In this document: piece by piece, positions 12,834 to 64,000 of the stretch
How the letters are laid out: every line of letters starts with the position of its first letter
Position numbering within the stretch: the first letter of the stretch is position 1
DNA from: Diadema antillarum
Lineage: Eukaryota
NCBI RefSeq assembly: GCF_040938485.1
Contig: NW_027271232.1
Span: forward strand, 1,178,001 to 1,242,000
DNA: 64,000 bases
Direction of reading: 5' to 3'
Made by a program: the position numbers and the translations under genes
The notes under the pieces: model-generated
Databases searched by the model: none
Told to the model about the DNA's origin: nothing
The model's input: the letters and a program-made list of their open reading frames with translations, nothing else

Positions 12834-14204
12834 TTAGACAGGGACATCGTAGATTGTCGAATCTGTATCACCTGTTACTTTATCGCTGAACAAAGCCGTT
12901 CTTCTCGTTGAGTTGGCCGTTGATTTGAACAAATCTCCGATCGCCTTGCGGAATTCAGGATTCCGAATCGTGTAAATGACAGGATTTGCGCAAGAATTAC
13001 AGAAGGCTAGGATAACTAGAGCTGAATTTAGTGGACTGTACAAGTAGGTTTCCGGCAGAACACGAAGATTGTACAAGAGATATCCCGTCTGCGTTGGTGT
13101 CCACGAGATGAGAAAAACCGCAACAACAAGGAACAGAATTTTGAGAACACTTTTCCTAGCCACAAGGTACTTAGCTGACGGCTTTAACTTGTTGCAATGT
13201 GAATCTTCCCCCAGCCTTCGGCGGGACTGTTGATGGAGCACCAGTGCGGTGAGAGCCTGGGCTACAAGCATGATGAACGCGGGTATGAGAAACTGAACGA
13301 GGAAAAGCATAATGCCTGAGGTAACCTGGGAAACGCTTGAATGAAATGCCGCTGTGCACTCGTCGTCCTTAGCACCAGCCACAAAAAATAAGAAAACGTT
13401 TGCCAAAAACGCGATCATCCATGTCAAGGCAACAACTTTCCCAACCCTCTGTCGTGTTACAAGACGCTTGAAATGAAGAGGGTGGGCAATCGCAATGTAT
13501 CTCTCTATTGGAATCAAGGTCAGAATGAAGATGGAGGCATCCACTGAAACCCACATGAGCATGGATGTGTAAACTACCTTGCAGTAGACATTCCCTAGCC
13601 ACGTTCCAGGAACCCTGAGTGGCGTCGGCAGGGGAACAATGAACACTGAAGTAAGGAAGTCAGCAGCGGCAAGAGCACCGATCAGTGCATCAGTTGACCG
13701 ACAATTGTGGCGCCTTTGGAATACCACCAGGATCACGGTCAGGTTTCCTACTATTCCCAGCATGGACATCGCTAGTTGTAGAATAGTCACCCATGTCCAT
13801 GTAACTGACTGCCACTTCCAAAGCGGCTGGGGTACTGCAGGCTTTTCCTCATTTTGCGCCGGAAAATTCGGCGTACCTATCTCTGCAATCTCTGTATGGA
13901 TTTCTGTTAGATATTTACGGTTGCTTTCAAAATTGTTAAAATCCCTGGGTGTTACAGTTTCGACTTTCAAATGACTCTTTTCGAACTGAGTAGAAATTGA
14001 ACCATTGTCCAAAGGTCGCATATGTGTCGTCAAATTGCCATCGATGTCTTCAATGTAATTGACAACAGGGGCACCCGTAGTGTTTGCGGTGAAATATTGA
14101 ATGGACGTAGTGGTGACCGGCTCCACTGTGACTGTATGGACCGTTTTAAATATGATAAGGAGAACAATAGTCCGAGTTGTCATTGTCCTCGTTTTTGCTC
14201 TCAT
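12834..14204 (-). CDS. Orphan class A GPCR paralog 2 (456 aa; alternative start Met at 14183)
   Basis: Same 7TM motifs as paralog 1 and an intact ORF. Acceptor TTCTTTGCAG|GAAAATG at 14209-14210; C-terminus DTDSTIYDVPV. Confidence 0.96.
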   Translation of the reverse strand: MRAKTRTMTTRTIVLLIIFKTVHTVTVEPVTTTSIQYFTANTTGAPVVNYIEDIDGNLTTHMRPLDNGSISTQFEKSHLKVETVTPRDFNNFESNRKYLTEIHTEIAEIGTPNFPAQNEEKPAVPQPLWKWQSVTWTWVTILQLAMSMLGIVGNLTVILVVFQRRHNCRSTDALIGALAAADFLTSVFIVPLPTPLRVPGTWLGNVYCKVVYTSMLMWVSVDASIFILTLIPIERYIAIAHPLHFKRLVTRQRVGKVVALTWMIAFLANVFLFFVAGAKDDECTAAFHSSVSQVTSGIMLFLVQFLIPAFIMLVAQALTALVLHQQSRRRLGEDSHCNKLKPSAKYLVARKSVLKILFLVVAVFLISWTPTQTGYLLYNLRVLPETYLYSPLNSALVILAFCNSCANPVIYTIRNPEFRKAIGDLFKSTANSTRRTALFSDKVTGDTDSTIYDVPV

Positions 14205-17320: not shown

Positions 17321-17453
17321 NNNNNNNNNNNNNNNNNNNNNNNNNNNNNNNNNNNNNNNNNNNNNNNNNNNNNNNNNNNNNNNNNNNNNNNNNNNNNNNN
17401 NNNNNNNNNNNNNNNNNNNNNNNNNNNNNNNNNNNNNNNNNNNNNNNNNNNNN
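17321..17453. other. Assembly gap (133 N)
   Basis: Run of N. Confidence 1.
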
Positions 17454-34320: not shown

Positions 34321-35733
34321 TTAGACATCGACATGGTAGATTGTTGAATCTGTATTCCCTATTGTTTTTTCGCTGAACAAAGCCGCTTTTCCTGATGAGC
34401 TAGTGGGTGATTTGAACAATTCTACTATCGCTTTGCGGAATTCAGGATTCCGAATCGTGTAAATTACAGGATTTGCGCAAGAATTGCAGAAGGCTAGGAC
34501 ATTTAGAGCAGTGAAAAGGGGGCCGTATAAATAGGACGCTGACAGGACACGAAGGTTGTACAATAGATAAACCGTGTGTGTTGGTGTCCACGAAATGAGA
34601 TAAACGCCAACAACAAGGAACAGAATCTTGAGAACATTTTTCCTAGCCACAAGATACTTCGCTGACGGGTTCGAATTATCGCATTTAGAATCTTCTCCTA
34701 TCCTCCGGCGGGACTGTCGATGGAGCATCAGTGCGGTCAGAATCTGGGCTACAAGCATGATGACAGCTGGTATTAGAAACTGAACGAGGAAAAGCACACA
34801 GCCGGTGATGATCTGGGCAGTCCATGACTGAAACACCTCAGTGCACCTGCCGCCCTTGGCACCAGCCACAAACAATAAGTACAAGTTTACCAAAAATGCC
34901 ACCAGCCATGACATGGCAACAGCTTTGGCAACTCTCTGCCGTGTTACAAGACGCTTGAAATGAAGAGGGTGGACAATCGCAATGTATCTTTCTATAGGAA
35001 TCAAGGTTAGAATGAAGACGGAAGCACCCACTGAAACCCACATGAGCAATGATGTGTAAACAACCTTGCAGTAGACATCCCCTAACCATGTTCCAGGAAC
35101 CTTCAGTGGTCTCGGCAGCGGAACCATGAACACTGATGTGAAGAAATCCGCAACGGCCAGAGCACCAATCAGTGCATCAGTTGACCGACAAGCGTGGCGC
35201 CTTTGGAACAACACCAGGATCACTGTCAGGTTTCCCACTATTCCTAGTATGGACATTGCTAGTTGCGGAATCGTCACCCATGTCCATGCAACTGACTGCC
35301 ACTTCCAAATCGGCCTAGGGCTTGTAGGCTCTTCCTCATTTTGCGCAGTAAAATTCGGCGTACCAATCTCTACTGTCTCTGTATAGATTTCTGTCATAAT
35401 TTCATGGCTGATTTCTGATATATTAAAATTCCTTTCTAGAAATGTCTTGATTCGAACAATTTTGTCTTGGCGTGGGGTTGCTCCAATATATAAGTAGCTC
35501 TTGACGATCTCAGTAGAATCTGAAACATTGCCTAAAGGCTGCCAGTGTGTCGTCAAATTGCTGTCGATGACTTCAATGTCTGAATGACTTTTAAGGCTGA
35601 CGACTAATGTCCCGACAGTGTTTAGGCCAGAATTTTGTACAGCTGTAGTGCTGACTGGTCGTGCTGTGACTGTAAGATGAACCGTTCCAGATATGACAAG
35701 AAGAACGATCGTCACGTTTATCATTATCCTCAT
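34321..35733 (-). CDS. Orphan class A GPCR paralog 3 (470 aa from the aligned ATG at 35733)
   Basis: Intact 7TM ORF. The ORF-track extension to 35772 crosses the conserved acceptor TTCTTTACAG at 35755-35756, so MRIMINV is the likely start. Confidence 0.96.
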   Translation of the reverse strand: MRIMINVTIVLLVISGTVHLTVTARPVSTTAVQNSGLNTVGTLVVSLKSHSDIEVIDSNLTTHWQPLGNVSDSTEIVKSYLYIGATPRQDKIVRIKTFLERNFNISEISHEIMTEIYTETVEIGTPNFTAQNEEEPTSPRPIWKWQSVAWTWVTIPQLAMSILGIVGNLTVILVLFQRRHACRSTDALIGALAVADFFTSVFMVPLPRPLKVPGTWLGDVYCKVVYTSLLMWVSVGASVFILTLIPIERYIAIVHPLHFKRLVTRQRVAKAVAMSWLVAFLVNLYLLFVAGAKGGRCTEVFQSWTAQIITGCVLFLVQFLIPAVIMLVAQILTALMLHRQSRRRIGEDSKCDNSNPSAKYLVARKNVLKILFLVVGVYLISWTPTHTVYLLYNLRVLSASYLYGPLFTALNVLAFCNSCANPVIYTIRNPEFRKAIVELFKSPTSSSGKAALFSEKTIGNTDSTIYHVDV

Positions 35734-36137
35734 TTTGTCTCTGTTTTTGTTTTCCTGTAAAGAACATAGCATCGTAAAATGGAAAAGAGGAGTTGATTCA
35801 TCTGTTGTTGTGTCAACGGATCTTTAAAGTGCATCACCATTCATTGTTAACTTTAAATTTGGAAACAGACGAATTTTCATCATAGCCATGGAATTTAAAA
35901 ATGACAGAAGTAGTTACATTATTTGTAACTATGTATTCAAATCAGACGATCTTATCATGTCAACCCCTTTATACAAGTCTTCTTTTGACCCACTGACAAA
36001 TCACTACCACTTTTTCAATTTTGAAATTAAAACATAGACCAAAACCTACCAACTTATACACAATAATGTATTTTTGCTGTAAAAAATTTCTTAGTTCCTT
36101 ATTTCAAAGCGTTAGGAGTACATTTGTTTTTTCTGTC

Positions 36138-49044: not shown

Positions 49045-50454
49045 TTAGACAGGGACATTGTAGATTGTCGAATCTGTATCACCTGTTATTTTTTCGCTGA
49101 ACAAAGCCGTTTTCCGCGTTGTGCTACTGGTTGATTTGAACAATTCTCCTATCGCTTTACGGAATTCTGGATTCCGAATCGTGTAAATGACAGGATTTGC
49201 GCAAGAATTACAGAAAGCTAGGACAACAAGAGCGAAATAGATAGGGCTGTACAAATACGACTCTGGCAGGACACGAAGGTTGTACAAAAGATATCCTATC
49301 TGTGTTGGTGTCCAAGACATGAGGAAAACGGCGACAACAAGGAACAAAATCTTGAGAACACTTTTTCTAGCCACAAGGTACTTAGCTGTCGGGTTTGAGT
49401 AATTGCAATTTAAATCTTCTCCTAACTTCCGACGGGATTGTCGATGGAGTACCAGTGCAGTGAGAGCCTGAGCTACAAGCATGACGGAACAAGGTATTAG
49501 AAACTCAATGAGGAAAACCATACAGCCTGTCATAATTTGGGAAAATTGTGAGTGAAACTTGTCAGTGCATGTGCCGCCCTTGGCCCTAGCCACAAATAAT
49601 GTGAAAAGGTTTAACAAAAACGCGGTAAGCCATGCCATGGCAACAGCGTTGAAAACTCTCTGCCGTGTTACAAGCCGCTTGAAATGAAGAGGGTGGGCAA
49701 TCGCTATGTATCTCTCTAGTGGAATCAATGCCAGAATGAAGATGGAGGCATCCACTGAAACCCACATGAGCATTGACGTGTAAACTACCTTGCAGTAGAT
49801 ATCTCCTAGCCATGTTTCAGGAACCTTCAGTGCCCTAGGCAGCGGAACCAAGAACACTGACGTGAAGAAATCCGCAGCGGCAAGAGCACCGATCAGTGCA
49901 TCAGTCGACCGGCAAGTGTGGCGTCTTTGGAATAACACCAGGATCACTGTCAGGTTTCCCACTATCCCAAGCATGGACATTGCCAGTTGTGGAATCGTCA
50001 CCCATGTCCATGCAACTGACTGCCATTTCCAACGCGGCTGGAGGACGTCGGGTTCTTCTTGTTTTTGTATGGTCAAATTCACCGTACTAACGACCGCGGT
50101 CTCCGTATTGATTTCAGTCTGATTTTCAAGGTTGATTTGCGACATGTTAAGATCCCTTTGTGGAAATATCTTGATTTGACTGTTTTTGTTGTCTTTTCCA
50201 GCTGTTTCGGTACGTAGATAGCTCTTTTCAAGCTGAGTAGAAACAGAAACATTGTCTAAAGGTTTGGCAATTGTCGTCACATCGCTGGGAAGGACCTCGA
50301 TGTCTGAATGACGTTTAAAATTGACAACAGATGTCCCCGTAGTGCTTGAGGGAGCTAGGTACTGAACAGCCGTAGTGGTGACCGGTGTGGCTGTAATATG
50401 GACCGTTGTAGATGTGATTAGGAGAGCTATCGTCCAAGCTGTCAGTATCCTCAT
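49045..50454 (-). CDS. Orphan class A GPCR paralog 5 (469 aa)
   Basis: Intact 7TM ORF. Acceptor TTCTTTACAG at 50471-50472; C-terminus DTDSTIYNVPV. Confidence 0.96.
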   Translation of the reverse strand: MRILTAWTIALLITSTTVHITATPVTTTAVQYLAPSSTTGTSVVNFKRHSDIEVLPSDVTTIAKPLDNVSVSTQLEKSYLRTETAGKDNKNSQIKIFPQRDLNMSQINLENQTEINTETAVVSTVNLTIQKQEEPDVLQPRWKWQSVAWTWVTIPQLAMSMLGIVGNLTVILVLFQRRHTCRSTDALIGALAAADFFTSVFLVPLPRALKVPETWLGDIYCKVVYTSMLMWVSVDASIFILALIPLERYIAIAHPLHFKRLVTRQRVFNAVAMAWLTAFLLNLFTLFVARAKGGTCTDKFHSQFSQIMTGCMVFLIEFLIPCSVMLVAQALTALVLHRQSRRKLGEDLNCNYSNPTAKYLVARKSVLKILFLVVAVFLMSWTPTQIGYLLYNLRVLPESYLYSPIYFALVVLAFCNSCANPVIYTIRNPEFRKAIGELFKSTSSTTRKTALFSEKITGDTDSTIYNVPV

Positions 50455-50994
50455 GTTTGTCCTTCTTTTGCTGTAAAGAACGTGATAACAACTAATCGTA
50501 AAATTGATACTTGGAGCTGATTCGTCTTTAGTGATGTCAGAGGATTATTGAAGTACATTAGGACCACGATTCGAAGTTAACTTTGACTTTGAAAACATGG
50601 TACAGGTAAAATCATACAAATAGATAAAATCTCATCAAAATCGAAAACGAGATAGCCATGGGTTTTTACAATGACAGTTTTTAGAAAACAGTAACATTAC
50701 GTGAAACCACGTATACGTAAAACCAAGTATGCAAATACATTAAACTTATTTTATCGTGTTATCAATCTTCTTTTGACCAACTGATGAATTACCACCAAAT
50801 TTTCTTCTTCTTCTTTTTTTTTTTTTGGGGGGGGGGTTGACATCATAAGACGTATATACTGCCACCTTTCACACACTACTGTTTATTTGCTGTAATATTC
50901 ATGAGTCGTAACTCTTGGAAGCTTGGTAGGTGATATACGATATTTTAAATATTTAAATTAGTTACCGACAATCGGGAGAGTTTTGAGGTTTTAA

Positions 50995-51375
50995 AGGGAT
51001 CGTATAGTTTTGGTTGAGACCTAATTTCAGGTTTCTAAAATTTTTTGGTGAGATAATGAGAAACCTCTTATGAAATATAAAAGAGCATATAATTACATGA
51101 GGAAATCAATGTTCATTTGATGAAAATTGGTTTTGAAATGGCTGAGATATCCAAAACAGAGTGATTCTTATAAAGTGTGGGACCGACCTTTTTTGCGATC
51201 GCTTTGTTTTACCTTATTTTTGGATGCTTCAGTCATTCCAAAACCGATTTTCATCAAATAAACTTTGAATTTCTCTTAAAATGGTATGCTCTGTACTATT
51301 TCATAAGTGTTTTCTTGGTATCCCGCAAAAAGCTAAAGGCCCAATTCTCATCTCCACCAATACTGTACCATCCCT
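50995..51375. mobile_element. Complete Kolobok-type MITE (381 bp) with TTAA target duplication, in the intron of paralog 5
   Basis: TTAA|AGGGATCGTATAGTTTTGGTTGAGA ... TCTCCACCAATACTGTACCATCCCT|TTAA. The empty site GAGGTT TTAA AGTATTCC is present in copy B (TTAA 56349-56352). Confidence 0.92.
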
Positions 51376-52478
51376 TTAAAGTATTCCTTTCATCTACTAG
51401 TATTTGGACAATTAGGTTACGACCAATATATATATTTTTTTCCATGAAAACGATTAAGATTTGAGCTTTCACTCAATTTCAACAGCGAGTCTTGAAGTTT
51501 TGGATTATTTCATTTACGCTTCTCAGTGATATCTGCTGGAACAGACGAAGTGGCATTGCATGTTGACTAAATCTACATCGTTTTTTAAGACAATACATAT
51601 TGATCCAACTTAGTCTCTGCCAAAATGCTCACCAGTCGTAGAGATTGCAAGAGAGCAATCAAATGGTCTTTAAGTGAAACAATTCATCCCATCAGTTAAA
51701 ATAAGGACGCACCTAGAAGGCTTTCAGAGACTTCTTCAAAATGCAAATGTACTAAACTTAGCCTCTGAATTACGGACTTTGCCTACCAGCTCTCTGGTAA
51801 AAATTTACAACCAATCTGTCCTACATGTTTGTCTTGACGGTTGATTCATCGATTGAAATTACTAACTGAAATTGTCAGTTATTCAATTATTCAGGAGAAT
51901 CAAAGGCTGTGGCTCGCATTACTTCTGCAACTCTCCTTTCACGACTGCCTTTAAAGTAGACTACCATTCACGAGATATTTTGCCATGTCAATATACGACT
52001 TTTTAACAACTTACATATCATGTCAATACTGCAAGAAAAAAAAGAACATTGGTTATTACTATATATGACTATAACCGAAATTATGGAATAGAGACTTCAT
52101 CTTCAAAGAAGGGGGTTCGTTAAGAATCCCTTTTATTGTAACATTATGTGATATGAAAAGATAATTCATTATCATTTTTTTTTCGTGTACACCTTAAAAC
52201 TGAAATAAGAATTGAAATCAGTTATAGAAATCTTTAGTCTTGAGAATTGACACTGCAACCAGGTTGAAGAAGGTTGCAACAGAGATGATTTGCAGCTGAC
52301 ATATTTTCTTCAAAAGTATCAATAGTATAGAGTGTTTTTGTTTGTTGAGGAAATAAAGGTATTTATGAAATATTCCAGGCACCTGCTACTGTAGGCGAAC
52401 AGTTGTTTATAAGGAATCAAAAACTATGCTTGAGCCTGTATTCTTTTGCACGCCTGAGGAAATTATGTGGCAAAACTT

Positions 52479-52745
52479 ACCCGAGAAGCGGATTGACTCC
52501 TGAACAAATATTGGCAATATCAGCTTGTCACGTACATCCGCACGTCCTTAAAATGATGTATTCGAGCTGCATGTCCTCAAGCTTAAATAGTCGGCGTCAA
52601 ATGATGCGCATGAGCAGAGTATGGGCTGAATTCAGCCAATGATAATCGTACACCAAACATAATCTGACACAGTATCCTTAGACAGACAGATACATACACA
52701 CACACACACACACACACTGACACACACTTACACACACACTCCATA
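52479..52745 (-). promoter_or_regulatory. Leader exon/promoter of paralog 5: donor 52479-52480, TATTTAA 52583-52589, TGCGCATGAGCA ~52605, CCAAT 52636-52640, (CA)n
   Basis: Co-linear with the other units. Confidence 0.68.
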
Positions 52746-54433
52746 CAAATATTACACAGCACGCAAGAAAAAAAAATCACTCATGGACCGTGCCACTGAA
52801 AAGCTACTGACTATTCATCAATACAGGGTGTACCTTAATTTCACAGCGTCTCTGATAATAAATTTTATCCTCATAATAGACAAGGCCAGACAAAACATTC
52901 AAACAAATACATCACTAGACAGTGCTAGCTAAATGTGTTAACGTACTCTAAGATAGTCATTGCATTTAGCAAATCTAGGTCGATAGATATGAAAAGGTAG
53001 AAGAGTAAAGTAAGTTCATTATACATGTATTGAACTTTCGAAAATGAAAGAAATCATCTCCTCCTAGTGGATCTTGAAGGAGTATAGGGAAATACAATGT
53101 TAATTTGCAGTCATAGGTGTTCCTTCAAGGAACTACACGTCTCAGTCGTACGTTCTGTGTAAATATTTCATTTTCGAGGTACAGTCAGGTACAACAATTT
53201 AGGTTTGTATCTTAGGTTTGTATAAAAGTTGTATCTGTCGCAAACGTTTGAAAGGAGACATAATTTTTGTAAGCAATTGAGATGTAAAAGAATACCAACA
53301 TTAAAGAGATAAGTTCGCATTACTGACATTTTGTTTCTTTCCCCTCCAATGACGATAAATCTACGACTTGGATTACAAGCGTGCTGATTCAATGTGGTCA
53401 TGACAGTAGGCATGACCGTATATGGTCTGCATGTGCGAAAATGCACGTAAATTAAATCCGTCGAATCGAAATCTAATCTGATTTTGTTGTCGAGACTCTG
53501 TGGGGCCATTAACAGCTGTCATTGGAATAAAACTTCTTTTCACATTTAGATTATGTGCTACATACATGTTAGTTTGAGACTTTTCATGTCTGTTATTTCT
53601 GTGGCATAGAATGGAGTTTCCTGGTAAATTGACTCTCTCCAATCAATATAACGTTTCAAACAATTCCGTCAAAACTATGATCTCGGAAAAAAAAAGAAAA
53701 AAATATATCAGTATTCAAGGTTGTTGTGGCCGCTCAAAATAAACAACTCGCCAACCAAATTGGTAATTGCTTGAATCAAGTTTGACAACATGATCAATGT
53801 TATCCGTCAATTTTATTCAAGGTTTCGTCCATTCGTCATATTTTCTTCTTTCGGTCATTTGTAATAATATTTTCGTCTTTTCGGTTACTCAAATTCGTTA
53901 ATGACATGCATATTGGAAATTAGTGCAATCAAATTAAGAATGTGAGATTCCTGTAAAGTGGGAAAATGATAATAATGGGGTGAGTTTTGTGGGACACTAG
54001 TTCATGTGGCAAGGACGTTGCCATGCTCATTTGGAAAATACCAGAAACATTATCCTTCTTTTCATGTCAAATCTGAGTAGAAATTTGACGTCTTTTGTAA
54101 AAGTGGTGCCTTGATTTCTTAAAGGTCCATGCCCCAGTTCCCCGTTATAACTAATCCACTATCGTAAAGAAAGTTGGCATGTGTACCTGAAAAATATGTA
54201 CAGGCAAGAATAAGGTGAAGATAAGGAAAATAAAACAAAACAGAATGATGAAAATGACAAGAAACGTGTCAGTGGGTCTAGAGTTCATCTGAGTGTCGCA
54301 AGATCAGCTTTCATGCATTCTTGCAGACTAGTAATGAAAGATTAACATAGACTGGGTGGGGGTTGCTCGCCAGAGGGGTATGGCGTCGATTTGGATATTC
54401 TGTCAAACAGTAGTCAACACCTACCAAGTTTGC

Positions 54434-55828
54434 TTACAAAATGGACCTTGGATCACCTGTTATTTTTTCGCTGAACAACGCCGTTTTCCCCGATGTGCTA
54501 CTGGTTGATTTGAACAATTCTCCTATCGCTTTACGGAATTCTGGATTCCGAATCGTGTAAATGACAGGATTTGCGCAAGAATTACAGAAAGCTAGGACAA
54601 CAAGAGTGAAATAAATAGGGCTGTACAAATAGGACTCTGGCAGAACACGAAGGTTGTACAAAAGATATGCTATCTGTGTTGGTGTCCAAGACATGAGGAA
54701 AACGACGACAACAAGGAACAAAATCTTGAGAACATTTTTTCTAGCCACAAGGTACTTAGCTGTCAGGTTTGAGTTATTGCAGTTTAAATCTTCTCCTAAT
54801 TTCCGACGTGATTGTCGATGGAGCACCAGCGCGGTCAGAACCTGGGCTACAAGCATGACGAAGGCAGGTATGAGAAACTGAACGAGGAAAAGCATAATGC
54901 CTGAGGTAACCTGGGAAAGCCGTGATTGAAATGCCGCATTACACTTTTCGTCCTTCGTACCAGCGACAAAGAATAAGAAAAAGTTTACCATGAATGCCAT
55001 CATCCATGTCACGACAACAGCCTTGCCAACCCTCTGCCGTGTTACAAGACGCTTAAAATGAAGAGGGTGGGCAATCGCAATGTATCTCTCTATTGGAATT
55101 AAGGCCAGACTGAAGATGGAGGCATCCACGGAAACCCACATGAGCATTGACGTGTAAACCACCTTGCAGTAGATACTCCCTAGCCATGTTTCAGGAACTC
55201 TCAGCGGCCTAGGAAGCGGAACCAAGAACGCTGACGTGAAGAAATCCGCGACGGCCAGAGCACCGATCAGTGCATCAGTCGACCGGCAAGTGTGGCGCCT
55301 TTGAAATAACACCAGGATCACAATCAGGTTTCCCACTATTCCAAGCATGGACATTGCTAGCTGCGGAATCGTTACCCATGTCCATGTAACTGACTGCCAT
55401 TTCCAACGCGGCTGGAGGACGTCGGGTTCTTCTTCTTTTTGTGCCGTGAAACTCACCGTGCTTATGACCGCGGTCTCCGTATTAATTTCAGTCTGATTTT
55501 CAAGGTTGATTTGCGACATGTTAAAATAGCTTTGAGGAAATATCTTGATTTGACTGTTTTTGTTGTCTTTTCCCGTTGTTTCGAAAGGCAGATACCTCTT
55601 TTGAAAATGAGTAGAAACAGAAACATTTTCTAAAGGTCGGGCGATTGTCGTCAAATTGCTGAGAAGGACCTCGATGTCTGGTTGACGTTTAAAATTGACA
55701 TCCGGTGTCCCCGTAGTGCTTGAGGGAGCTAGGTAATGAACAGCCGTAGTGGTGACCGGTGTGGCTGTAATATGGACGGTTGTAGATGTGATTAGGAGAG
55801 CTATCGTCCAAGCTGTCAGTATCGTCAT
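54434..55828 (-). CDS. Orphan class A GPCR paralog 6 (464 aa) with a chimeric C-terminus (..ITGD-PRSIL)
   Basis: Intact 7TM ORF with an acceptor at 55845-55846. The last five codons and the stop come from spacer sequence homologous to ~59905-59928. Confidence 0.94.
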   Translation of the reverse strand: MTILTAWTIALLITSTTVHITATPVTTTAVHYLAPSSTTGTPDVNFKRQPDIEVLLSNLTTIARPLENVSVSTHFQKRYLPFETTGKDNKNSQIKIFPQSYFNMSQINLENQTEINTETAVISTVSFTAQKEEEPDVLQPRWKWQSVTWTWVTIPQLAMSMLGIVGNLIVILVLFQRRHTCRSTDALIGALAVADFFTSAFLVPLPRPLRVPETWLGSIYCKVVYTSMLMWVSVDASIFSLALIPIERYIAIAHPLHFKRLVTRQRVGKAVVVTWMMAFMVNFFLFFVAGTKDEKCNAAFQSRLSQVTSGIMLFLVQFLIPAFVMLVAQVLTALVLHRQSRRKLGEDLNCNNSNLTAKYLVARKNVLKILFLVVVVFLMSWTPTQIAYLLYNLRVLPESYLYSPIYFTLVVLAFCNSCANPVIYTIRNPEFRKAIGELFKSTSSTSGKTALFSEKITGDPRSIL

Positions 55829-56398
55829 GTTTGTCCTTCTTTTCCTGTGAAGAACGTAATAACAACAAATCGTGAAAGTGATACTACTACTTGGAGCTAC
55901 AGCGAGTACTTCGTCTTTTGTGATGTCAGAGGATTATTGAAATACATTAGGCGTACGATTCGAAGGTAACTTTGACTTTGAAAACATGGTACATGTAACA
56001 TCATACAAACAGATAAAATCTCATCAAAATCGAAAATTATTTCTAGATAAATGACAGTTTTTAGAAAACAGTAACATTACGTGAAACCACGTATGCAAAT
56101 ACATTAAGCTGATTTTATCGTGTTATCAGTCTTCTTTCCACTAACTGATTGAGTACGACCAAAGTTGTTTTTTTTTTGGGGGGGGGGGAGGGGGAATTGA
56201 CATCATAAAATATATACTGTCACGTTTCACACACTATTGTTTCTTTGCTGTAAAATTCATGAGCCGTAACTCTAGGAAACTTGGTAGGTGATACACGATA
56301 TTTTAGATATCTAAATTAGTTACTGACGATCGGGAGAGTTTTGAGGTTTTAAAGTATTCCTTTCATCTTCTAGTATTTGGACAATCAGGTTACGACCA

Positions 56399-56438
<40 letters not shown>

Positions 56439-57531
56439 TCCATTAAAACGAATACTTCAGTTATCATTCAATTTCAGCAGCGAGTTTTAAAGTTTTTTAT
56501 CATTTTATTTACTCCTCTTAGTGACATCCGCTGGAACATCGGAGTGGCATTGCATATTGACTAAATCTACATAGCTTTCCAAGACAATAAATATTGATCC
56601 AACGTATTCTCTGTCAAATGCTCTCCATCGTAGAGATTGCAAGAGAGCAAACAAAGGGTCTTTAAGTGAAATAATTAATCCCAAAGACGCACCTAGAAGA
56701 CTTTCAGAGACCTGTTGAAAATGCAATAGTACTAAACTTAGCCTCTGAATTACGGATTTTGCCTACCAGCTCTGTGGTAAAAATTCACAACCAATCTGTC
56801 CTACATGCTTGTCCTTACGGTTGATTCATCGATTGAAACTGCAAATTAAAATTGTCTGTTACTCGTTGTTCAGCAAAATCAAAGACTCTGACTCGCATAA
56901 CTTCTGCAACTCTTCTTTTACGCCTGCCTTCAAAGTAGACAGCCATTCACGAGATGTTTTGCCATGTCAACATACGACGATGCTTTTATATCATGCAAAT
57001 ACTACAGGGAAAAATAAGAACTTTGGTTTTGACAACATATATATGACTATATAATATATAATCATATTATGATTATATTGTGTGTTGGGAATTTTATCTT
57101 CAAAGTCAAGGATTCATTAAGAATCCCTTTCAGTGTAACATTATTTGATTTGAAAAGATAATTCCTTATCATTTGTTTGGAGACACCTTAAAATTGAAAT
57201 AAGAATTGAAAGCAGTAATTGAAATCTTTAGTCTTGAGTATTAATACAGCAACCAGGTTGAAGAATGTTGCAACAGAGATGATTTGCAGCTGATTTAATT
57301 ATTTACTTCAAAAGTTTGATTAGAATAAAATGCTTTTCATTTGTTGAGGCAATAAACTTATTTACAAAAATATTCCAGGCACCTACGACTGTAAGTGAAC
57401 AGTAACTACACAATCCTGCACAGGAGGGTGGGGTATAATACTAAAAAGAAATGTATTGTTTATAAGGAATCAAAAACTATTCTTGAGCCGGTATTCTTTT
57501 GAATGCCTGAGGATATTATGTGGCAAAACTT

Positions 57532-57795
57532 ACCCGAGAAGCAGCTTGACTCCTGAGCAAATATTAGCAATATCAGCAGGTCACGTACGTCCGCGCGTCC
57601 TTAAAATGGTGTATTCGAGCTGCATGTCATCAAGCTTAAATAGTCGGCGTCAAATGATGCGCATGAGCAGAGTATGGGTTGAATTCAGCCAATGATAATC
57701 GTACGCCAAACATAATCTGACACAGTATCCTTATACAGACAGATACACACACACACACTGACACACACTGACACACACTTACACACACACTCCAT
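57532..57795 (-). promoter_or_regulatory. Leader exon/promoter of paralog 6: donor 57532-57533, TATTTAA 57636-57642, TGCGCATGAGCA ~57658, CCAAT 57689-57693, (CA)n
   Basis: Co-linear with the other units. Confidence 0.68.
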
Positions 57796-59547
57796 ACAAA
57801 TATTACACAGCACGCAAGAAAAAAAAAATCACTCATGGACCATACCATCGAAAAGCTACTGACTAAATCATCAATGCCTTAATTTGACAACCTGACAGCG
57901 TCTCTGATAATCAATTTTAACCTCATAATAAGCAAAGCCAAACTGGACATTCAAACAAATACATCACTAGACAGTGCTAGCTATAACAGGAACGGAACGT
58001 GATGTTGTTGCTGTTTTTGTGTGGGTTATAGATAGATTCATTTAAATCCTATCTAGTCCTCAAAGAGATCCATCATCGTTTCTGCCCCTTTTCTGTCTCA
58101 TGTGAATGAGGGGGATCAAGAAAGCATCAAAGACGAAGAAAAAAAAATCACCCAATGTGTAAAGTATTCCAAGATCGCATTGCATTTAGCAAATCTAGTT
58201 CGATAGATATGAAAAGATACAAAACTAAAACAAGTTCATTATACTGAACTTTCAAATATGAAAACAATCATTTCCTCCTGGTGGATCTTGAAGGAGTATT
58301 GGGAAATTTAATGTTAATTTGCACTCATAGGTTTTCCTTCGTGGAACTATACGTACGTTATAAATATTTCATTTTTCGAGGTACAGTAGGGTACAATTAT
58401 GTTTGCGTGAGCCATGAAAAAAAATGCAAAAAAAAAATGTATCTCTCGCAAATGTAGGAATGAAGACATAATTTTTGTAAGCAATTGAGATGTAAAAGAA
58501 CACAAACATTAGAATGATAATTTCACATTTCAGACATTTTGTGTCTTTCCCCTCCAATGACGATAAATCTATGAGCTGGATTGCAAAGCGTGCTGATTCA
58601 ATGTAATCATGACAGTAGGCATGACCGGATATGGTCTGCACGTGCAAAAATATACGTAAATTCAATCCGTCGAATCGAAATCAATCTGATTTTGTTGTCA
58701 AGACTCTGTGGGGCCATAAGCTGCTGTCATTTGAATAAACTTCTGTGCACATATAAATTATGTGCTATATGGATGGTGGTTTGAGTCTGTTCATGCCCGT
58801 TATTTCTGTGGCATAGTATTGAATTTCCTGGTAAATTGTAAACTCTCTCCGATCAATATAACGTGTCCAACAATTATTTCCCGCCCAAATTATGATCTTG
58901 GTAAAAAAAAAAAATGAGTAAGAAAGTTCTTGTGGCCACTCAAAATAAACAACTTGCCGAACAAAATTAATTGGTAGTTACGTATAGTAAATCAATTTGA
59001 CAAAATGAGCAATGGTATCCGGCAGTCTTATTCAAGTTTTCGTCCATTCGTTATATTTTCGTCTTTCGGTCATTCATGACAATAGTTTTGTCTTTTCGGT
59101 CACTCAAATTCGTGAATGAGCGTGGATATTGGAAATGAGTGCAATCAGACTAAGAATGTGAGATTCCTGTGAAGTAGGAAAAGATAATAGGGTGGGCTTT
59201 AAGGGATGCTAGTTCATGTGCATGGCAATGACGTTGTTATGCTCATTTGGCAAATACCAGAAACATTATCCTTTTATTTTTCATGTCAATCTCAGTTAGA
59301 AATTTGATTCCGTTTGTAAAAATGGGGCTTTGATTTCGTATAAATGCCCATGTTCTCCCTTGTAACTAATCCACTATCGTAAAGAAAGTTGGCATGATTA
59401 CCGGAAAAATATCCACAGGTGAGAATATGATAAGCATAAAGAACACAAACAAACAAAAAAGGATAATGAAAAAGACAAGAAACCAAGGAATCAGTGAATC
59501 TAGAGTTTATCTGAGTATCACAACTTCAGCTTTCACGTATTGTTGTA

Positions 59548-59804
59548 CATATGAAGAGTTTGTTTGCAAAAACCGATAAGTCCATAGTTGCCAAATGGAG
59601 ATATTTGCGATTAAAGGTCAAGAAAAATACAGAGAATAATAAGAAAAAATTTGCTTCTTTTGACCATAACTTCAAAAATATACCTTTTTATGTAGTGACC
59701 AATATATCATTTAAAAGGTATTATTTTGTACTTTATGACAGAGATCGTACTTCAAAATCTTCAAAAATGGACTTATCGGTTTTTGCAAACAAACCCTTCA
59801 TATA
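59548..59804. mobile_element. MITE with ~37 bp TIRs and TA flanks (Tc1/mariner-like, family assignment tentative)
   Basis: ATATGAAGAGTTTGTTTGCAAAAACCGATAAGTCCAT (from 59549) matches the reverse complement of 59767-59803 at 36/37 positions. The element is absent at the homologous position in copy A (~54320). Confidence 0.85.
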
Positions 59805-61550
59805 TATAACAATCAAAGCTAAATACAACGGAGGGGGGGGGGATCGGCAGAGAGATATGACGTCCATTTGCATATTCTGTCAACCTATCGTCAACACCTA
59901 CCAAGTTTGCTCACAAGATGAAACTTACGTTTTCAACAAGAAGATAAGTATGTTAAAAAAATGACCCCAGTTTAGTCTCAAACAGGGCACGGAGGGCACG
60001 GGAGGGGCATCCCTGGATTTGTCATTAACAATCTTGAAACACACACACAGCACTAACTTAGCTCTATCCCTTCTCGCACCAGTATGGTGGGCCATAGCCT
60101 GTATCATAGGCTAGAGCATCCGTGAATATGAATATCGTTGGTTGTAATTGTGGTTTTTGTTCAGATGTTTCTTCCGTTTTTGTATTTTTTCGTACCTTAA
60201 GTATCTTAGCCTTATGATGTTGTACAATTCGTATTTCTTTCTTTGCATTGCATTCTGCATACATCTAATCTGTGAAGTTTGCCGTTACAACCGATCTCGT
60301 TTTGTCCTTATGCTTATACACTCCTGGCATTTGCTCATTAATATCGAAGAAAAGCAAGTTGCTACTTGAAAAGAAACCATGTATGTATACTATTTCACGC
60401 ATAGATTCAAGTAAATGCAAAACTGTTCCATGCGTAGTATATAATTTGTCTTTATATTGTTTCATTTCACTTTCAATGAGCTTCTACTATGATATGATAA
60501 CAATATTTCTGTTTAGCTAAGGTCGAACCAGTGCAATGTACAGGGAATCCCATTTCTTTTTGTAGATACACATGTAGCAAGACTACGATGTGATATTTAT
60601 GGTATTGTAAGTAATACACGAATGTACTCTTCTACTCGTGTTTATTATCGTCCTTTCACTCGCACTCTGGCTGCCCACGCATTCACACACACCTACACCA
60701 GGCTCATCCATACACTCAATACATTTATACGCATACTTTGCAAAATTCATTCTCAGTGTTTCACTCAACCATACAAACGGTTGTAAAGAAATACATAGTG
60801 GCAGAAGACAACACATACTTACATAACACATACTTAAAAAAACATAAAATTCTTAGGGTAGGAGAATACGTATATAAATGTTGTTTCATATACTATATTA
60901 AACATAGATAAGCTCGGTATATGCAAAATACTTACAATGATTTCAGGGATCTATCACGTTTTCGTTATCAAAGTTTACTGCAGGCCAAGAAAAAGTTATA
61001 TTGAAGTGACATGATATATACTTTTAAAACATTTTTATGGTTCACTTTTGTGCAATTTGCTTACTTGAATATATTTCAAACAATAAATCACTATCTAGCA
61101 CTTTCCAAAACGCACTTTAATATTATTGCTTCATTGCTGCAAAAAAACACACGATTAAATTATCATAAAGTTAAACTCTGCAAAATGTATCAATATGAAT
61201 ACAAAATAAAACATTTGAACAAATTACCGTGCATTGAGAAACTGTTGTTTCAGGAATTAATTCATTTTGCCGATTAAGCGGATGTGAATATTTTATTACG
61301 GGAGGGACGGAAATACTGGTGGCACAACAACATTCTGACAACAAAACGAATCACCACCACCAATAATATCAAACTTAAAGTAACCAAAAAAACTTTATTC
61401 TTCTATCGCCTCAAACGGCGTCGTCCCAGTCTCAGTCCATCTTCTTTCCAACGTGGACCGAACAGGCCATACCAGGCCAGACCATGCGTATTCATGACAA
61501 TTCGTTTACAATTCTACCCATTACAATGTATTTGAAAAGCCGAAAAATGC

Positions 61551-62957
61551 TTAGACATCGACACTGAAAATTGTTGAATCTGTTTCACCTGTTATTTTTT
61601 CGCTGAACAAAGCTGTTCTTCTCGATGTCCTAGTAGTTGATTTGAACAACTCTCCTATCGCTTGGCGGAATTCAGGATTCCGAATTGTGTAAATGACAGG
61701 ATTTGCGCAAGAATTGCAGAAGGCTAGGACAACCAAAACAGAACTTAGAGGGCTGTACAAATAAGAAGTTGGCAAAAATCGAAAGTTGTACAAGAGATAT
61801 GTCGTCTGTGTTGGTGCCCAAGAGATGAGGAAAACGACGACAACAAGGAATAGAATCTTGAGAACACTTTTCCTTGCCACGAGGTACCTAGCTGACGGCT
61901 TTGAGTTTTTACAGTTGTAATCTTCTCCCAGCCATTGGCGGGATTGTCGATGTAGGACCAGTGCGGTGAGAGCCTGGGCTACAAGCATGATGACAGCTGG
62001 TATCAGAAACTGAACAAGGTAAAGCATACAACCTGAGGTAACCTGTGAAAGCCGTGACTGAAATGTCACAGCGCACTTGTCGTTCTTTGCACCAACCACA
62101 AATAATTCGAATACATTCGCAAGAAACGCAACCAGCCATGTCACAGCAACAACTCTGCCAACCCTTTGCCGTGTTACAAGACGCTTGAAATGAAGAGGGT
62201 GGGCAATCACAATGTATCTCTCTATTGGAATTAAGGTCAGAGTGAATATGGAGGCATCCACTGAAACCCACATTAACATGGACGTGTAAACCACCTTGCA
62301 GTAGATATTCCCTAGCCATGTTCCAGGAACCCTAAGCGGCGTAGGCAGCGGAATCATGAACACTGACGTGAGGAAATCCGCAACGGCCAGAGCACCGATC
62401 AATGTATCTGTCGACCTGCAAGTGTGGCGCCTTTGGAATAACACCAGGATCACGGTCAAGTTTCCCACTATTCCCAGCACAGACATTGCTAGTTGCGGAA
62501 TTGTCACCCATGTCCACGTAACTGACTGCCACTTCCAAAGCGGTAGAGAATCCTCATTTTGCCCGGTTAAATTCGGCGTACTAATGTCCGCAGTCTCTAT
62601 GTAGATTTCTGTCTGATTTTCATGGTTTATTTCAATCACATTAAGATCCGTTCGTGGAAATGTTTTGATTTGAATGATTTTGTCGTACTGTTGAGTTGTT
62701 TCGTTATGCAGGCCTAAGGATCTCATTTCGAACCGATTAGAAACTGAATCATTTTCTAATGGTTGGGCATGTGTCGTCAAATTGCCGTGGATGGCATCGG
62801 TGTTTGAATTTCTTTCAAAATGGACAAGCAGTGCCGCCGTAGTATTTGGGGTAGCATATTGAGGAGCTGTAGTTCTGACCGGTTGTGCTGTAACTGAAGG
62901 ATGAACCTTTGAAGATATGATGAAGAGAATGATCGTCCAAGTTTTCAGTACCCTCAT
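61551..62957 (-). CDS. Orphan class A GPCR paralog 7 (468 aa from ATG 62957)
   Basis: Intact 7TM ORF. The acceptor TTTTTTATAG at 62974-62975 precedes MRVLK. Its intron-homologous sequence runs to the window end, so the promoter is predicted off-window. Confidence 0.96.
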   Translation of the reverse strand: MRVLKTWTIILFIISSKVHPSVTAQPVRTTAPQYATPNTTAALLVHFERNSNTDAIHGNLTTHAQPLENDSVSNRFEMRSLGLHNETTQQYDKIIQIKTFPRTDLNVIEINHENQTEIYIETADISTPNLTGQNEDSLPLWKWQSVTWTWVTIPQLAMSVLGIVGNLTVILVLFQRRHTCRSTDTLIGALAVADFLTSVFMIPLPTPLRVPGTWLGNIYCKVVYTSMLMWVSVDASIFTLTLIPIERYIVIAHPLHFKRLVTRQRVGRVVAVTWLVAFLANVFELFVVGAKNDKCAVTFQSRLSQVTSGCMLYLVQFLIPAVIMLVAQALTALVLHRQSRQWLGEDYNCKNSKPSARYLVARKSVLKILFLVVVVFLISWAPTQTTYLLYNFRFLPTSYLYSPLSSVLVVLAFCNSCANPVIYTIRNPEFRQAIGELFKSTTRTSRRTALFSEKITGETDSTIFSVDV

Positions 62958-64000
62958 GCTTGTTCTTCTCTTCCTATAAAAAACATGATGATAAACATTG
63001 GTATCAAACATGGACATGCGTGGAGTTGTCTTGTCTTTTGTGAGTACTATTTGAGTGCACCATCATTCGATCTTCACTTGGACGTTGAAAACGTGCTATA
63101 GTAATACAAACAAATGAAATTACATCAAAATCGAAAATTAGACAGCCGTGGACTTTTATAATGACTGTTTTATGAAACATTGACATTTCGTGTTGCCATG
63201 TATGTAAAATCAGAGGATAGTATGTCAATGCTTAGCAAGTCTTCTCTGACCAATTAGTGAATCACCAGCATTACATCTCTTTAATGAAGTCATGAGACAA
63301 AAACTTTCATGTTTCGCTCATTATTGTTTCTTTGCTGTAAAAATTAATAAACCATAACTCTTGCGGACTTTGGTTGCTAATAATATGTATGGGACCTTTT
63401 TTGTCAGATATGTAGCTACCAACCAGCGGGAGAGTCTTTGGGTTACACAGTAATCATTACTTCTACTTCTATTTGGTTTTTGAGATTATGACCAATAGTA
63501 CTCTTTCACGAAAAATGAGTAAAACTTCAGATTTCGGTCATTTTCACCTCATAGTTTTACACAGTTTTAGATTTTATACAGTTTTATAAAGTTTTACCTT
63601 ATGCTTTTCAAGGATACACATTTGAACATACGGATTATAATTGCATGTTGACTGTGTCTACATAGCTTACAAAGACAATGTCTTTTCAGCAGAACACGTT
63701 TCGATCCAAATTTAGGTAGTTTTTGTCAGATGTTGTCCTGCCGATGTAATCACAAGACGAGCAAAAAGAAAAAAAAAACACTTCCAAGTCAGGACGCACC
63801 GGTAGGGCCTTCAGAGATATGGCCGAATTTCTGAATTTAGCCACTGAATAACGGCCTGAATTAAAGCCTGCTGGTAATAATTACAACCAATCTGTCATGC
63901 ATGATTGTATAATATCTACTGACTTCTGATTCATTGATTGAAGAGACTAATTGAGATAGTCAGTAATTGAAATAATAAGCAGGATCGGTGGGCTGACTCG

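What the first reader, a model, noticed from the sequence alone, without database searches (positions are those of the whole stretch)
49480..55030. Ligand-pocket cassette (TM4-ECL2-TM5) appears shuffled between non-sister paralogs
Genes 5 and 6 are sister duplicates, with ~9 differences in ~135 aa from TM5-end to the tail. Over the 58 aa TM4-ECL2-TM5 segment they are only ~26/58 identical. In that segment gene 6 matches distant gene 2 (~43/58 aa; 51 identical nt at 54868-54918 = 13283-13333, where gene 5 has 11 mismatches), and gene 5 is closer to gene 3 (~35/58). Genes 1 and 4, 35 kb apart and with very different ectodomains, share 68/70 nt (7441-7510 vs 42822-42891). Established knowledge: TM4-ECL2-TM5 forms much of the class A orthosteric pocket. 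Inference: short-tract gene conversion is recombining pocket modules, giving a combinatorial way to diversify a receptor repertoire. Counts are by hand.
Basis: partly seen in the sequence, partly recalled or inferred. Interest (0 to 1): 0.8.

Follow-up and report, generated by a model that had tools for sequence, protein, structure and literature searches.

The report
Old pocket-segment swaps in urchin receptors
Two recently duplicated sea-urchin chemoreceptor-like genes carry unrelated versions of the segment lining the ligand pocket, most likely from old gene conversion plus a burst of amino-acid change, a mechanism already known from vertebrate odorant receptors.

Summary
The window is Diadema antillarum (GCA_040938485.1, contig JBFRCO010000344.1). 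It holds seven intronless class A GPCR genes in tandem on the minus strand.

Differences between genes 5 and 6 cluster in 168 nt (TM4-ECL2-TM5): 32% inside against 8% outside, 0/500 permutations.

With 30 paralogs, the block rejects gene 5 + gene 6 as sisters (AU p=0.003; ECL2-TM5 half alone p=0.0006), while the flanks support them at 100%. Synonymous divergence rises about 2.5-fold inside the block (p=0.036). The PHI recombination signal (p~0.001) disappears in the window genes when the block is removed.

The "ongoing combinatorial shuffling" reading is only partly supported:
- D. setosum orthologs carry the same two blocks (1 and 4 nt differences), so the event predates the species split and has been stable since.
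- No close donor exists. Gene 6 versus gene 2 synonymous divergence is not reduced, apart from the 51-nt identical tract.
- Gene 5's block carries 10 unique fixed changes (9 nonsynonymous), a 12-fold local excess.

A second discordant block (gene b1, other haplotype; AU p=0.008) shows the pattern recurs.

Verdict: a real feature, and a new member of a known kind (mosaic chemoreceptors by gene conversion). Moderate interest.

The parts
49045..50454 (-). Gene 5 (g5): intact 469-aa intronless class A GPCR with a signal peptide and a Thr/Asn-rich ectodomain.
   Evidence: ORF. Pfam 7tm_1 E=6.6e-38. The D. setosum ortholog s5 has flank dS 0.034 and omega 0.11.
49483..49656 (-). g5 TM4-ECL2-TM5 block (58 codons). 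It is divergent from every sampled paralog. Its ECL2-TM5 half is of the QI(M/V)TGC type.
   Evidence: Max chi-square breakpoints 49486-49653. Best nt identity to 30 paralogs is 79%. It has 10 unique fixed changes, 9 nonsynonymous and 1 synonymous. It groups with t1/t2 at UFBoot 88-93.
54434..55828 (-). Gene 6 (g6): intact 464-aa paralog and tandem duplicate of g5, with a replaced C-terminal end.
   Evidence: ORF. Pfam 7tm_1 E=7.3e-40. Ortholog s6 has flank dS 0.057 and omega 0.09 and shares the same C-terminus.
54857..55030 (-). g6 TM4-ECL2-TM5 block. Its TM4 half is nearest to u2 (88%). Its ECL2-TM5 half is of the SQVTSG type, nearest to g2/a2 (88-89%).
   Evidence: It differs from D. setosum s6 by 1 nt over the block.
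54868..54918 (-). 51-nt tract in g6 TM5 that is identical to g2 13283-13333.
   Evidence: 51/51 identical. Run of 22 polymorphic sites, p<=0.0005 pairwise. g2's sister copies a9 and s2 differ in this tract, so the direction may be g6-type into g2.
13283..13333 (-). The matching 51-nt tract in gene 2 (g2, CDS 12834-14204).
49075..54433 (-). The g5 copy of the ~5.4-kb tandem duplication unit. Its partner is 54449-59910.
   Evidence: Self-BLAST: the coding part is 86.8% identical and the noncoding parts about 80%.
54449..59910 (-). The g6 copy of the tandem duplication unit.
6992..8401 (-). Gene 1 (g1). Its block 7430-7603 is of the AQIISGIM type and is shared with g4.
42373..43941 (-). Gene 4 (g4). 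The listed ORF starts at a TTG; the probable ATG lies near 43785, by alignment with g5. Its block is 42811-42984.
   Evidence: g1/g4 are 68/70 identical at 7441-7510 / 42822-42891. Flank data reject a g4+g1 clade (p=0.005), but the block data do not significantly reject the flank split (p=0.18).
34321..35772 (-). Gene 3 (g3).
   Evidence: The 311-aa annotated product P0010 is identical.
61551..63017 (-). Gene 7 (g7).
   Evidence: The D. setosum ortholog is P0002/s7.

Best explanation
**What the locus is.** It is part of a lineage-specific tandem array of intronless class A GPCRs in Diadema. These are echinoderm odorant-receptor-like genes, mislabelled 'TAAR9-like' by similarity.

**History of genes 5 and 6.**
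- They arose by a ~5.4-kb tandem duplication. Neutral divergence between the copies is about 0.2, roughly 4-5 times the D. antillarum / D. setosum divergence.
- After the duplication and before the species split, a ~170-280 nt patch was overwritten in at least one copy. The patch runs from the start of TM4 through ECL2 to just before the TM5 proline.
- The overwriting was non-reciprocal recombination (interlocus gene conversion) from a paralog of another block type.
- The ECL2-TM5 half carries the strong signal: g6 has the g2/g7/s8 type and g5 has the t/u/v type.
- The g5 lineage then, or at the same time, fixed a burst of mostly nonsynonymous unique changes confined to the block. This fits episodic positive selection or relaxed constraint on the ligand pocket.
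- Both blocks have since been held by purifying selection.

**Elsewhere in the array.** The same kind of block discordance recurs in gene b1. The block therefore behaves as an occasionally exchanged, selection-filtered module rather than a continuously shuffled one.

**Shown versus inferred.**
- Shown: clustering of differences, topological discordance, raised synonymous divergence, conservation across species, and the excess of unique changes in g5.
- Inferred: the mechanism (conversion), which copy was overwritten, and the selective cause.
For: **Species and family**
- The window is 100% identical to the D. antillarum contig. D. setosum is collinear at about 94%.
- Pfam 7tm_1. The nearest solved relatives are class A receptors.

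**Differences cluster**
- Breakpoints from the chi-square scan: 54/168 differences inside versus 101/1224 outside, 0/500 permutations.

**Trees conflict**
- Flanks give (g5,s5)+(g6,s6) at 100%. The block places g5 with t1/t2 (UFBoot 73-93) and g6 inside the g2/g7/s8 group (93-96).
- AU rejection of g5/g6 monophyly in the block: p=0.007 (20 taxa), p=0.003 (30 taxa), and p=0.0006 for the ECL2-TM5 half.
- The constrained tree gives the g5+g6 stem zero length.
- No g5+g6-specific shared site lies in block codons 127-179, against 15 in the tail.

**Synonymous divergence**
- NG dS is 0.51 in the block versus 0.208 in the TM flanks.
- Same-amino-acid codons differ at 6/22 inside versus 38/344 outside, p=0.036.

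**PHI recombination test**
- p~0.001 on the whole core.
- With the block removed: p=0.38 (window genes), 0.04 (10 D. antillarum genes), 0.10 (12 D. setosum genes).
- Within the block alone: p=0.01-0.03.

**Age and stability**
- g6/s6 differ by 1 nt and g5/s5 by 4 nt over 171 nt.

**g5 burst**
- 10 unique fixed changes in the block (9N:1S), or 6.0 per 100 nt versus 0.5-0.7 in flanks, p=3e-5.

**Recurrence (gene b1)**
- b1 is 96.5% identical to s1 in the ectodomain and 93% to g1/s1 in the TM flanks, but 81% in the block.
- 21 of 25 b1-only block sites carry states present in other paralogs, 7 of them synonymous.
- AU p=0.0076.
Against: - **No close donor.**
  - g6 versus g2/a2 is only 88-89% in the ECL2-TM5 half, with block dS 0.37, no lower than in their flanks.
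  - g5's best match anywhere is 79%.
  - A region-restricted protein search found nothing.
- **Diagnostic sites are nearly all nonsynonymous.** The sites separating the block types offer few synonymous markers, so selection-driven convergence is not formally excluded.
- **Small samples.**
  - The synonymous test rests on 22 codons.
  - With only the seven window genes the AU test does not reject g5+g6 (p=0.128).
  - The TM4 half alone does not reject it (p=0.115).
  - Third-position PHI is significant in two gene sets but not in the D. setosum set.
- **Little recent exchange.** No exchange among the window genes' ortholog pairs since speciation survives multiple testing.
- **Uncalibrated count.** I could not calibrate the 'both states present in other paralogs' count against the flanks. 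With seven genes, the singleton share is similar in block and flanks.
Confidence: 0.6

Rival explanations
1. There was no exchange. After the duplication, the pocket segment of both copies diverged by strong diversifying selection. The matches to other paralogs' block types are convergent reuse of a limited set of tolerated residues.
For: - The block is the family's protein-level hotspot: pairwise dN is 0.05-0.39, against 0.04-0.09 in TM1-ICL2.
- g5 has 9 unique nonsynonymous changes against 1 synonymous.
- Type-diagnostic sites are almost all nonsynonymous.
- No donor with low dS exists.
- The 7-taxon AU test does not reject sisterhood.
Against: - Synonymous divergence is also raised in the block.
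- More than 10 diagnostic codons, several needing two nucleotide changes (ACC/ATG, ATT/TGT), would each have to converge on existing types.
- AU p=0.003 to 0.0006 with 30 taxa.
- The g5+g6 stem has zero length in the block.
- In b1, 7 synonymous states are among those shared with other paralogs.
Confidence: 0.17
2. The history runs the other way. g5 and g6 are old neighbours of different block types. Their flanks (ectodomain, TM1-3, TM5-end to tail) were homogenised by conversion or unequal crossing-over, while selection kept the pocket block distinct.
For: - Noncoding parts of the two units are only about 80% identical, while coding flanks are 91-93%.
- Ectodomain dS (0.113) is below the noncoding divergence, and flank dS is uneven (0.11, 0.28, 0.16).
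- Homogenising conversion is well described in receptor arrays (PMC1995454).
Against:
- TM-flank dS (0.208) matches the noncoding divergence once the ortholog synonymous rate (0.03-0.06) is compared with about 6% noncoding divergence.
- This history needs two separate homogenised tracts that stop at the block edges, rather than one patch.
Confidence: 0.15
3. It is an assembly artefact: a chimeric join or collapse among near-identical tandem paralogs in an uncollapsed diploid assembly.
For: The assembly retains both haplotypes and is inflated to 1.75 Gb (PMC13511894). Logan contigs over the region are fragmentary.
Against: An independent chromosome-level assembly of another species, D. setosum, has the same two genes, the same blocks and the same g6 C-terminus.
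Confidence: 0.01

Closest known systems
Mosaic vertebrate odorant and vomeronasal receptor genes produced by interlocus gene conversion (Sharon et al. 1999, as summarised in PMC1995454)
   Same: Both involve tandem arrays of intronless class A chemoreceptor genes. In both, short-tract non-reciprocal exchange gives mosaic coding sequences, combined with duplication and positive selection on ligand-contact segments.
   Different: Here the family is an echinoderm-specific expansion with a long N-terminal ectodomain. The discordant patch coincides with TM4-ECL2-TM5 in at least two genes. The events are old and the donors are not identified.
Echinoderm odorant-receptor-like expansions ('surreal-GPCRs' of Strongylocentrotus purpuratus; starfish and sea cucumber OR-like groups)
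   Same: Both are large, lineage-specific, clustered expansions of rhodopsin-type GPCRs in echinoderms (PMC7042368). The nearest non-Diadema hits are S. purpuratus and Lytechinus proteins at 40-43% identity.
   Different: Membership in a particular surreal-GPCR group (A-F) was not tested. I found no paper in the library reporting gene conversion in these families.
Trace amine-associated receptors (the NCBI name given to the Diadema relatives)
   Same: Class A fold. TAAR9 and TAAR1 structures are among the sequence hits (E~1e-23).
   Different: There is no Asp at 3.32; the residue is Met whether counted from the TM3 Cys or back from ERY. The TAAR TM7 signature after NPxxY is absent. CCK1R and beta-1 adrenoceptor score as well or better. 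The name is a similarity label, not a family assignment.
Patchwork evolution of immune recognition genes (MHC peptide-binding region micro-conversion)
   Same: Short conversion tracts move pre-existing motifs between paralogs or alleles in the ligand-contact segment, under diversifying selection.
   Different: This comparison is from my own knowledge and was not tested here. No population-level polymorphism data exist for this locus. The two haplotypes of the sequenced animal carry the same blocks in g1 and g2.

Membership tests
Class A (rhodopsin-like) GPCR | Match to the 7tm_1 profile over all seven helices | tested here: met
   PF00001 E=6.6e-38 (g5) and 7.3e-40 (g6), covering profile positions 1-260 of 260.
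Class A (rhodopsin-like) GPCR | E/DRY at the end of TM3, NPxxY in TM7, the TM3-ECL2 cysteine pair, and the TM4 Trp and TM5 Pro landmarks | tested here: met
   ERY, NPVIY, the YCKV Cys, the ECL2 Cys, TW in TM4 and FLIP in TM5 are all visible in the translations. They align to CCK1R.
Echinoderm OR-like / surreal-GPCR expansions | Intronless genes in lineage-specific tandem clusters | tested here: met
   There are seven single-ORF genes in 64 kb. At least 32 paralogs were sampled over about 300 kb in two Diadema species.
Echinoderm OR-like / surreal-GPCR expansions | Phylogenetic placement inside one of the published S. purpuratus groups A-F | not tested
   Only two S. purpuratus hits at 40-43% identity were seen. 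No tree with the reference sets was built.
Echinoderm OR-like / surreal-GPCR expansions | Expression in tube feet, pedicellariae or other sensory surfaces | not testable with these tools
   No RNA run holds the stretch.
Trace amine-associated receptors | Asp3.32 amine contact and the TAAR TM7 fingerprint following NPxxY | tested here: not met
   Met occupies 3.32 by either count. The TM7 sequence continues TIRNPEF rather than the TAAR motif (translations; alignment).
Interlocus gene conversion tract | Bounded segment whose tree conflicts with well-supported flanking trees | tested here: met
   Breakpoints. AU p=0.003 for g5/g6 and 0.0076 for b1. The PHI signal depends on the block.
Interlocus gene conversion tract | Synonymous divergence between the sister copies rises to the inter-paralog level inside the tract | tested here: met
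   6/22 versus 38/344 same-amino-acid codons, p=0.036. dS is 0.51 versus 0.208. The sample is small.
Interlocus gene conversion tract | Identifiable donor with reduced (near-zero) divergence inside the tract | tested here: not met
   The best donors are 88-89% (g6) and 79% (g5). g6-g2 block dS is 0.37. The only exception is the 51-nt g2=g6 identity.

The most novel reading that the evidence does not exclude
The TM4-ECL2-TM5 block is a recurrently exchanged module in this echinoderm receptor array. Independent conversion events with coincident boundaries (g5|g6, b1|g1/s1, possibly g4|g1) would move pre-existing pocket types onto new ectodomain and signalling backbones. Selection would then retain the new combinations, making module exchange rather than point mutation the main source of new pockets.
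Probability: 0.25. Interest if true: 0.65.

Novelty: new member of a known kind. Interest (0 to 1): 0.42.

Why it matters
Echinoderm odorant-receptor-like families are large and almost uncharacterised. How their ligand pockets diversify is not known. I found no report of gene conversion in them in the searched library.

This locus gives a concrete, datable example:
- One recent duplicate pair with otherwise near-identical backbones carries two unrelated pocket segments.
- Each segment is conserved across two species.

That makes a clean natural chimera experiment. Expressing g5, g6 and block-swapped versions would test directly whether TM4-ECL2-TM5 sets ligand specificity in this family.

The concept itself (mosaic chemoreceptors by conversion plus selection) is established for vertebrate receptors. 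The value here is as a new, well-bounded case rather than a new principle.

Tried and rejected
- **AU test with only the seven window genes.** It does not reject g5+g6 sisterhood (p=0.128). Power came only after adding orthologs and outside paralogs.
- **The named donors.** g2 as donor for g6 and g3 as donor for g5 were rejected as recent donors, because block dS is not reduced.
- **Triplet (3SEQ-like) scans with g5 or g6 as child.** They come out 'significant' with nearly every third sequence. They do not identify a donor and cannot separate conversion from local acceleration.
- **Triplet scan of ortholog pairs.** The x2/v1 hits are artefacts of v1's frameshifted 3' end. The rest have scores of 5-7, not significant after about 500 tests.
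With seven genes the singleton share is similar in flanks and block, so I do not lean on it.
- **Reads.** Only short Logan contigs were available, dominated by family-wide repeats. They could not phase the blocks or show the second haplotype of g5/g6. One 'joint' at 54858>49493 is most likely a g5-type contig multi-mapping on g6's similar tail.
- **RNA.** No RNA run was found.
- **Region-restricted protein word search with g5's block.** It found 3 candidates, none significant. This test has low power.
- **IQ-TREE codon models.** They ran but did not report omega in the output I could read.
- **The alternative-haplotype copy of g5/g6 on contig JBFRCO010000010.1.** It could not be reached. No annotated protein lies within 10 kb of it.

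Full report
**What is in the window**

The window holds seven minus-strand ORFs of 456-522 aa: g1 6992-8401, g2 12834-14204, g3 34321-35772, g4 42373-43941, g5 49045-50454, g6 54434-55828 and g7 61551-63017.

- g5 and g6 match Pfam 7tm_1 over the whole profile.
- Their nearest solved relatives are class A receptors: CCK1R, the beta-1 adrenoceptor and TAAR9.
- Each gene has a signal-peptide-like start and a ~140-aa Thr/Asn-rich ectodomain. The landmarks ERY, a TM4 Trp, an ECL2 Cys, the TM5 FLIP motif and NPVIY are all present.
- A locus fetched through the annotated product of g3 is 100% identical to window 24321-45256. It names the source as Diadema antillarum GCA_040938485.1, contig JBFRCO010000344.1.
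- The closest proteins are Diadema 'TAAR9-like' annotations. That name does not hold: residue 3.32 is Met, not Asp, and the TAAR TM7 fingerprint is absent.
- The family fits the echinoderm odorant-receptor-like expansions described in PMC7042368. I did not test its placement in a named group.

- Every hand count was reproduced: 26/58, 43/58, 35/58, 51/51 nt with 11 mismatches in g5, and 68/70 for g1/g4.
- g5 and g6 are 91-93% identical outside the block and 69% inside it.
- A two-breakpoint chi-square scan places the cluster at g5 49486-49653 and g6 54860-55027. That is 54/168 differences against 101/1224, with 0 of 500 permutations as extreme.
- The 51-nt g2=g6 identity is a run of 22 matching polymorphic sites (pairwise p<=0.0005).
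- The g1/g4 run is weaker (p=0.007 before correction).

**Is it exchange, or only fast evolution?**

Four lines of evidence point to a different ancestry for the block.

1. *Trees.*
   - I compared 20 and then 30 paralogs. They come from the window, more of the same contig (L007), the other D. antillarum haplotype (L006, L009) and D. setosum (L001, L002, L004, L005, L008).
   - The flanks unite g5, g6 and their orthologs at 100%.
   - The block puts g5 with t1/t2/u1-type genes and g6 with the g2/g7/s8 type.
   - Forcing g5+g6 together in the block costs about 20 log-likelihood units. It is rejected at AU p=0.007 (20 taxa) and p=0.003 (30 taxa).
   - The ECL2-TM5 half alone gives p=0.0006. The TM4 half alone does not reject (p=0.115).
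   - In the forced tree the g5+g6 stem has zero length.
2. *Synonymous sites.*
   - Codons encoding the same residue in both genes differ in 6/22 cases inside the block and 38/344 outside (p=0.036).
   - NG dS is 0.51 in the block against 0.208 in the TM flanks.
3. *PHI test.*
   - It gives p~0.001 on the whole TM core.
   - With the block removed, p is 0.38 for the window genes, 0.04 for 10 D. antillarum genes and 0.10 for 12 D. setosum genes.
   - Within the block alone, p is 0.01-0.03.
4. *Shared derived sites.* No site specific to g5+g6 lies between block codons 127 and 179, against 15 in the tail.

These tests agree, but each rests on few sites. The sites that define the block types are almost all nonsynonymous, so convergence under selection is not excluded.

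- *Age and stability.*
  - D. setosum is collinear with the window at about 94% and has orthologs of both genes.
  - s6 differs from g6 by 1 nt and s5 from g5 by 4 nt over the 171-nt block. It also shares g6's odd C-terminus.
  - The mosaic is therefore older than the species split and has been kept by purifying selection since (ortholog omega about 0.1). It is not an assembly artefact.
- *No donor.*
  - g6 versus g2 has block dS 0.37, no lower than in their flanks.
  - Across 30 paralogs, the best matches are 88% (u2, TM4 half) and 88-89% (g2/a2, ECL2-TM5 half) for g6. For g5 they are only 79%.
- *g5's divergence is largely its own.* The g5 lineage has 10 fixed changes found in no other paralog, 9 of them nonsynonymous. 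That is a 12-fold excess over its flanks (p=3e-5).
- *Little recent exchange.* Nothing among the window genes' ortholog pairs survives multiple testing.

**Dating**

- The two ~5.4-kb duplication units are collinear, at about 80% identity in noncoding parts.
- Ortholog dS is 0.03-0.06 and g5-g6 flank dS is 0.21.
- The duplication is therefore roughly 4-5 times older than the species split. The block event lies between the two.

**Which copy changed?**

- t1, t2 and u2 combine a g6-like TM4 with a g5-like ECL2-TM5.
- u2 is the weakly supported flank sister of g5+g6 (UFBoot 43-44).
- The most economical reading is an ancestor of that form. g6's ECL2-TM5 would then have been overwritten by a g2/s8-type sequence, and g5's TM4 would have diverged rapidly. 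This is inference, not a demonstrated result.

**The pattern recurs**

- Gene b1 (P0003, on contig JBFRCO010000010.1) lies in the stretch that is 97-98% identical to the window around g1/g2. It is most likely on the other haplotype, since the assembly retains both (PMC13511894).
- b1 is 96.5% identical to D. setosum s1 in the ectodomain and 93% to g1/s1 in the TM flanks, but 81% in the block.
- Of 25 block sites where b1 stands alone against g1/a1/s1, 21 carry states present in other paralogs, 7 of them synonymous.
- Monophyly with g1/a1/s1 is rejected in the block (AU p=0.0076).
- b1 also shares a run of 9 sites with g1 at the ectodomain/TM1 junction (p=0.006, chosen after the fact).
- If b1 and s1 are orthologs, this block change is more recent than the g5/g6 one.
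- For g4, the flanks reject a clade with g1 (p=0.005). The block data do not significantly reject the flank split (p=0.18). That case is only suggestive.
- For the 51-nt g2=g6 tract, g2's sister copies a9 and s2 carry the other state. The transfer may have gone into g2.

**Comparison with what is known**

Mosaic odorant and vomeronasal receptors produced by gene conversion, alongside duplication and positive selection, are textbook for vertebrates (PMC1995454, citing Sharon et al. 1999). I found no such report for echinoderm receptor families. This is a new member of a known kind.

**Limits**

- Only 32 of an unknown number of subfamily members were sampled.
- The second haplotype's g5/g6 could not be fetched.
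- Reads were uninformative, and no RNA data were found.
- Branch-site selection tests could not be run.
- The assembly gap at 17321-17453 was left untouched.

Noticed in passing
window 54434-54460; L001 16551-17945: g6 ends in a short replaced C-terminus (…GDPRSIL) where the tandem-duplication junction falls inside the CDS. The D. setosum ortholog has the same ending, so the truncated tail is old and tolerated.
   Followed up: partly
window 49045-50454 and 54434-55828; L001 3244-4728 and 16551-17945; L002 1884-3458: g5, g6 and their D. setosum counterparts s5, s6 and s8 are intact ORFs. The g5/s5 and g6/s6 pairs have omega about 0.1. No matching protein is in the searched collection, and the loci list no called gene there, so the current annotations seem to miss them.
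   Followed up: partly
window 22200-25112 (+): Three ORFs have weak Exo_endo_phos and clear RVT_1 matches. This is a degraded non-LTR retrotransposon between g2 and g3.
   Followed up: yes
L006 (D. antillarum contig JBFRCO010000010.1, 114366-135301): This is a probable alternative haplotype of the g2/g1 region (97-98% identical). It has structural differences: a 2.5-kb insertion matching window 31188-33710 in inverted orientation, an extra N-terminally truncated g2-like gene (a9), and a reverse-transcriptase-like ORF at L006 16947-18020.
   Followed up: partly
L010 9578-11092 (gene b1) versus window g1 and L004 s1: The trio g1/b1/s1 is itself mosaic. b1 is closest to s1 in the ectodomain. b1 matches g1 over about 100 nt at the ectodomain/TM1 junction. 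All three are equidistant in the TM flanks. b1 is the outlier in the block.
   Followed up: partly
L008 2857-4125 (v1); L001 3244-4728 (s8): v1 loses the family frame after TM6 and is a probable pseudogene. s8 lacks five residues in TM2.
   Followed up: no
window g7 and g1 versus L001 s7 and L004 s1: Ortholog synonymous divergence is uneven. g7-s7 is 0.138 and g1-s1 is 0.135, against 0.03-0.06 for g4, g5 and g6. The g1/g2 region is only 86-89% identical to D. setosum, against about 94% for g4-g7. Possible causes are non-orthology, post-split exchange or rate differences.
   Followed up: no
window 50968-51525: This is a very high-copy element with inverted-repeat joints. Summed contig depth is in the hundreds of thousands to millions in runs of three organisms, so it is a common interspersed repeat upstream of g5.
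   Followed up: no
window, ectodomain parts of all seven genes (for example 50032-50454 in g5): The N-terminal ectodomains evolve much faster than the TM core. Inter-paralog nt identity is 63-73% and omega is 0.4-0.8. They have no Pfam match.
   Followed up: no
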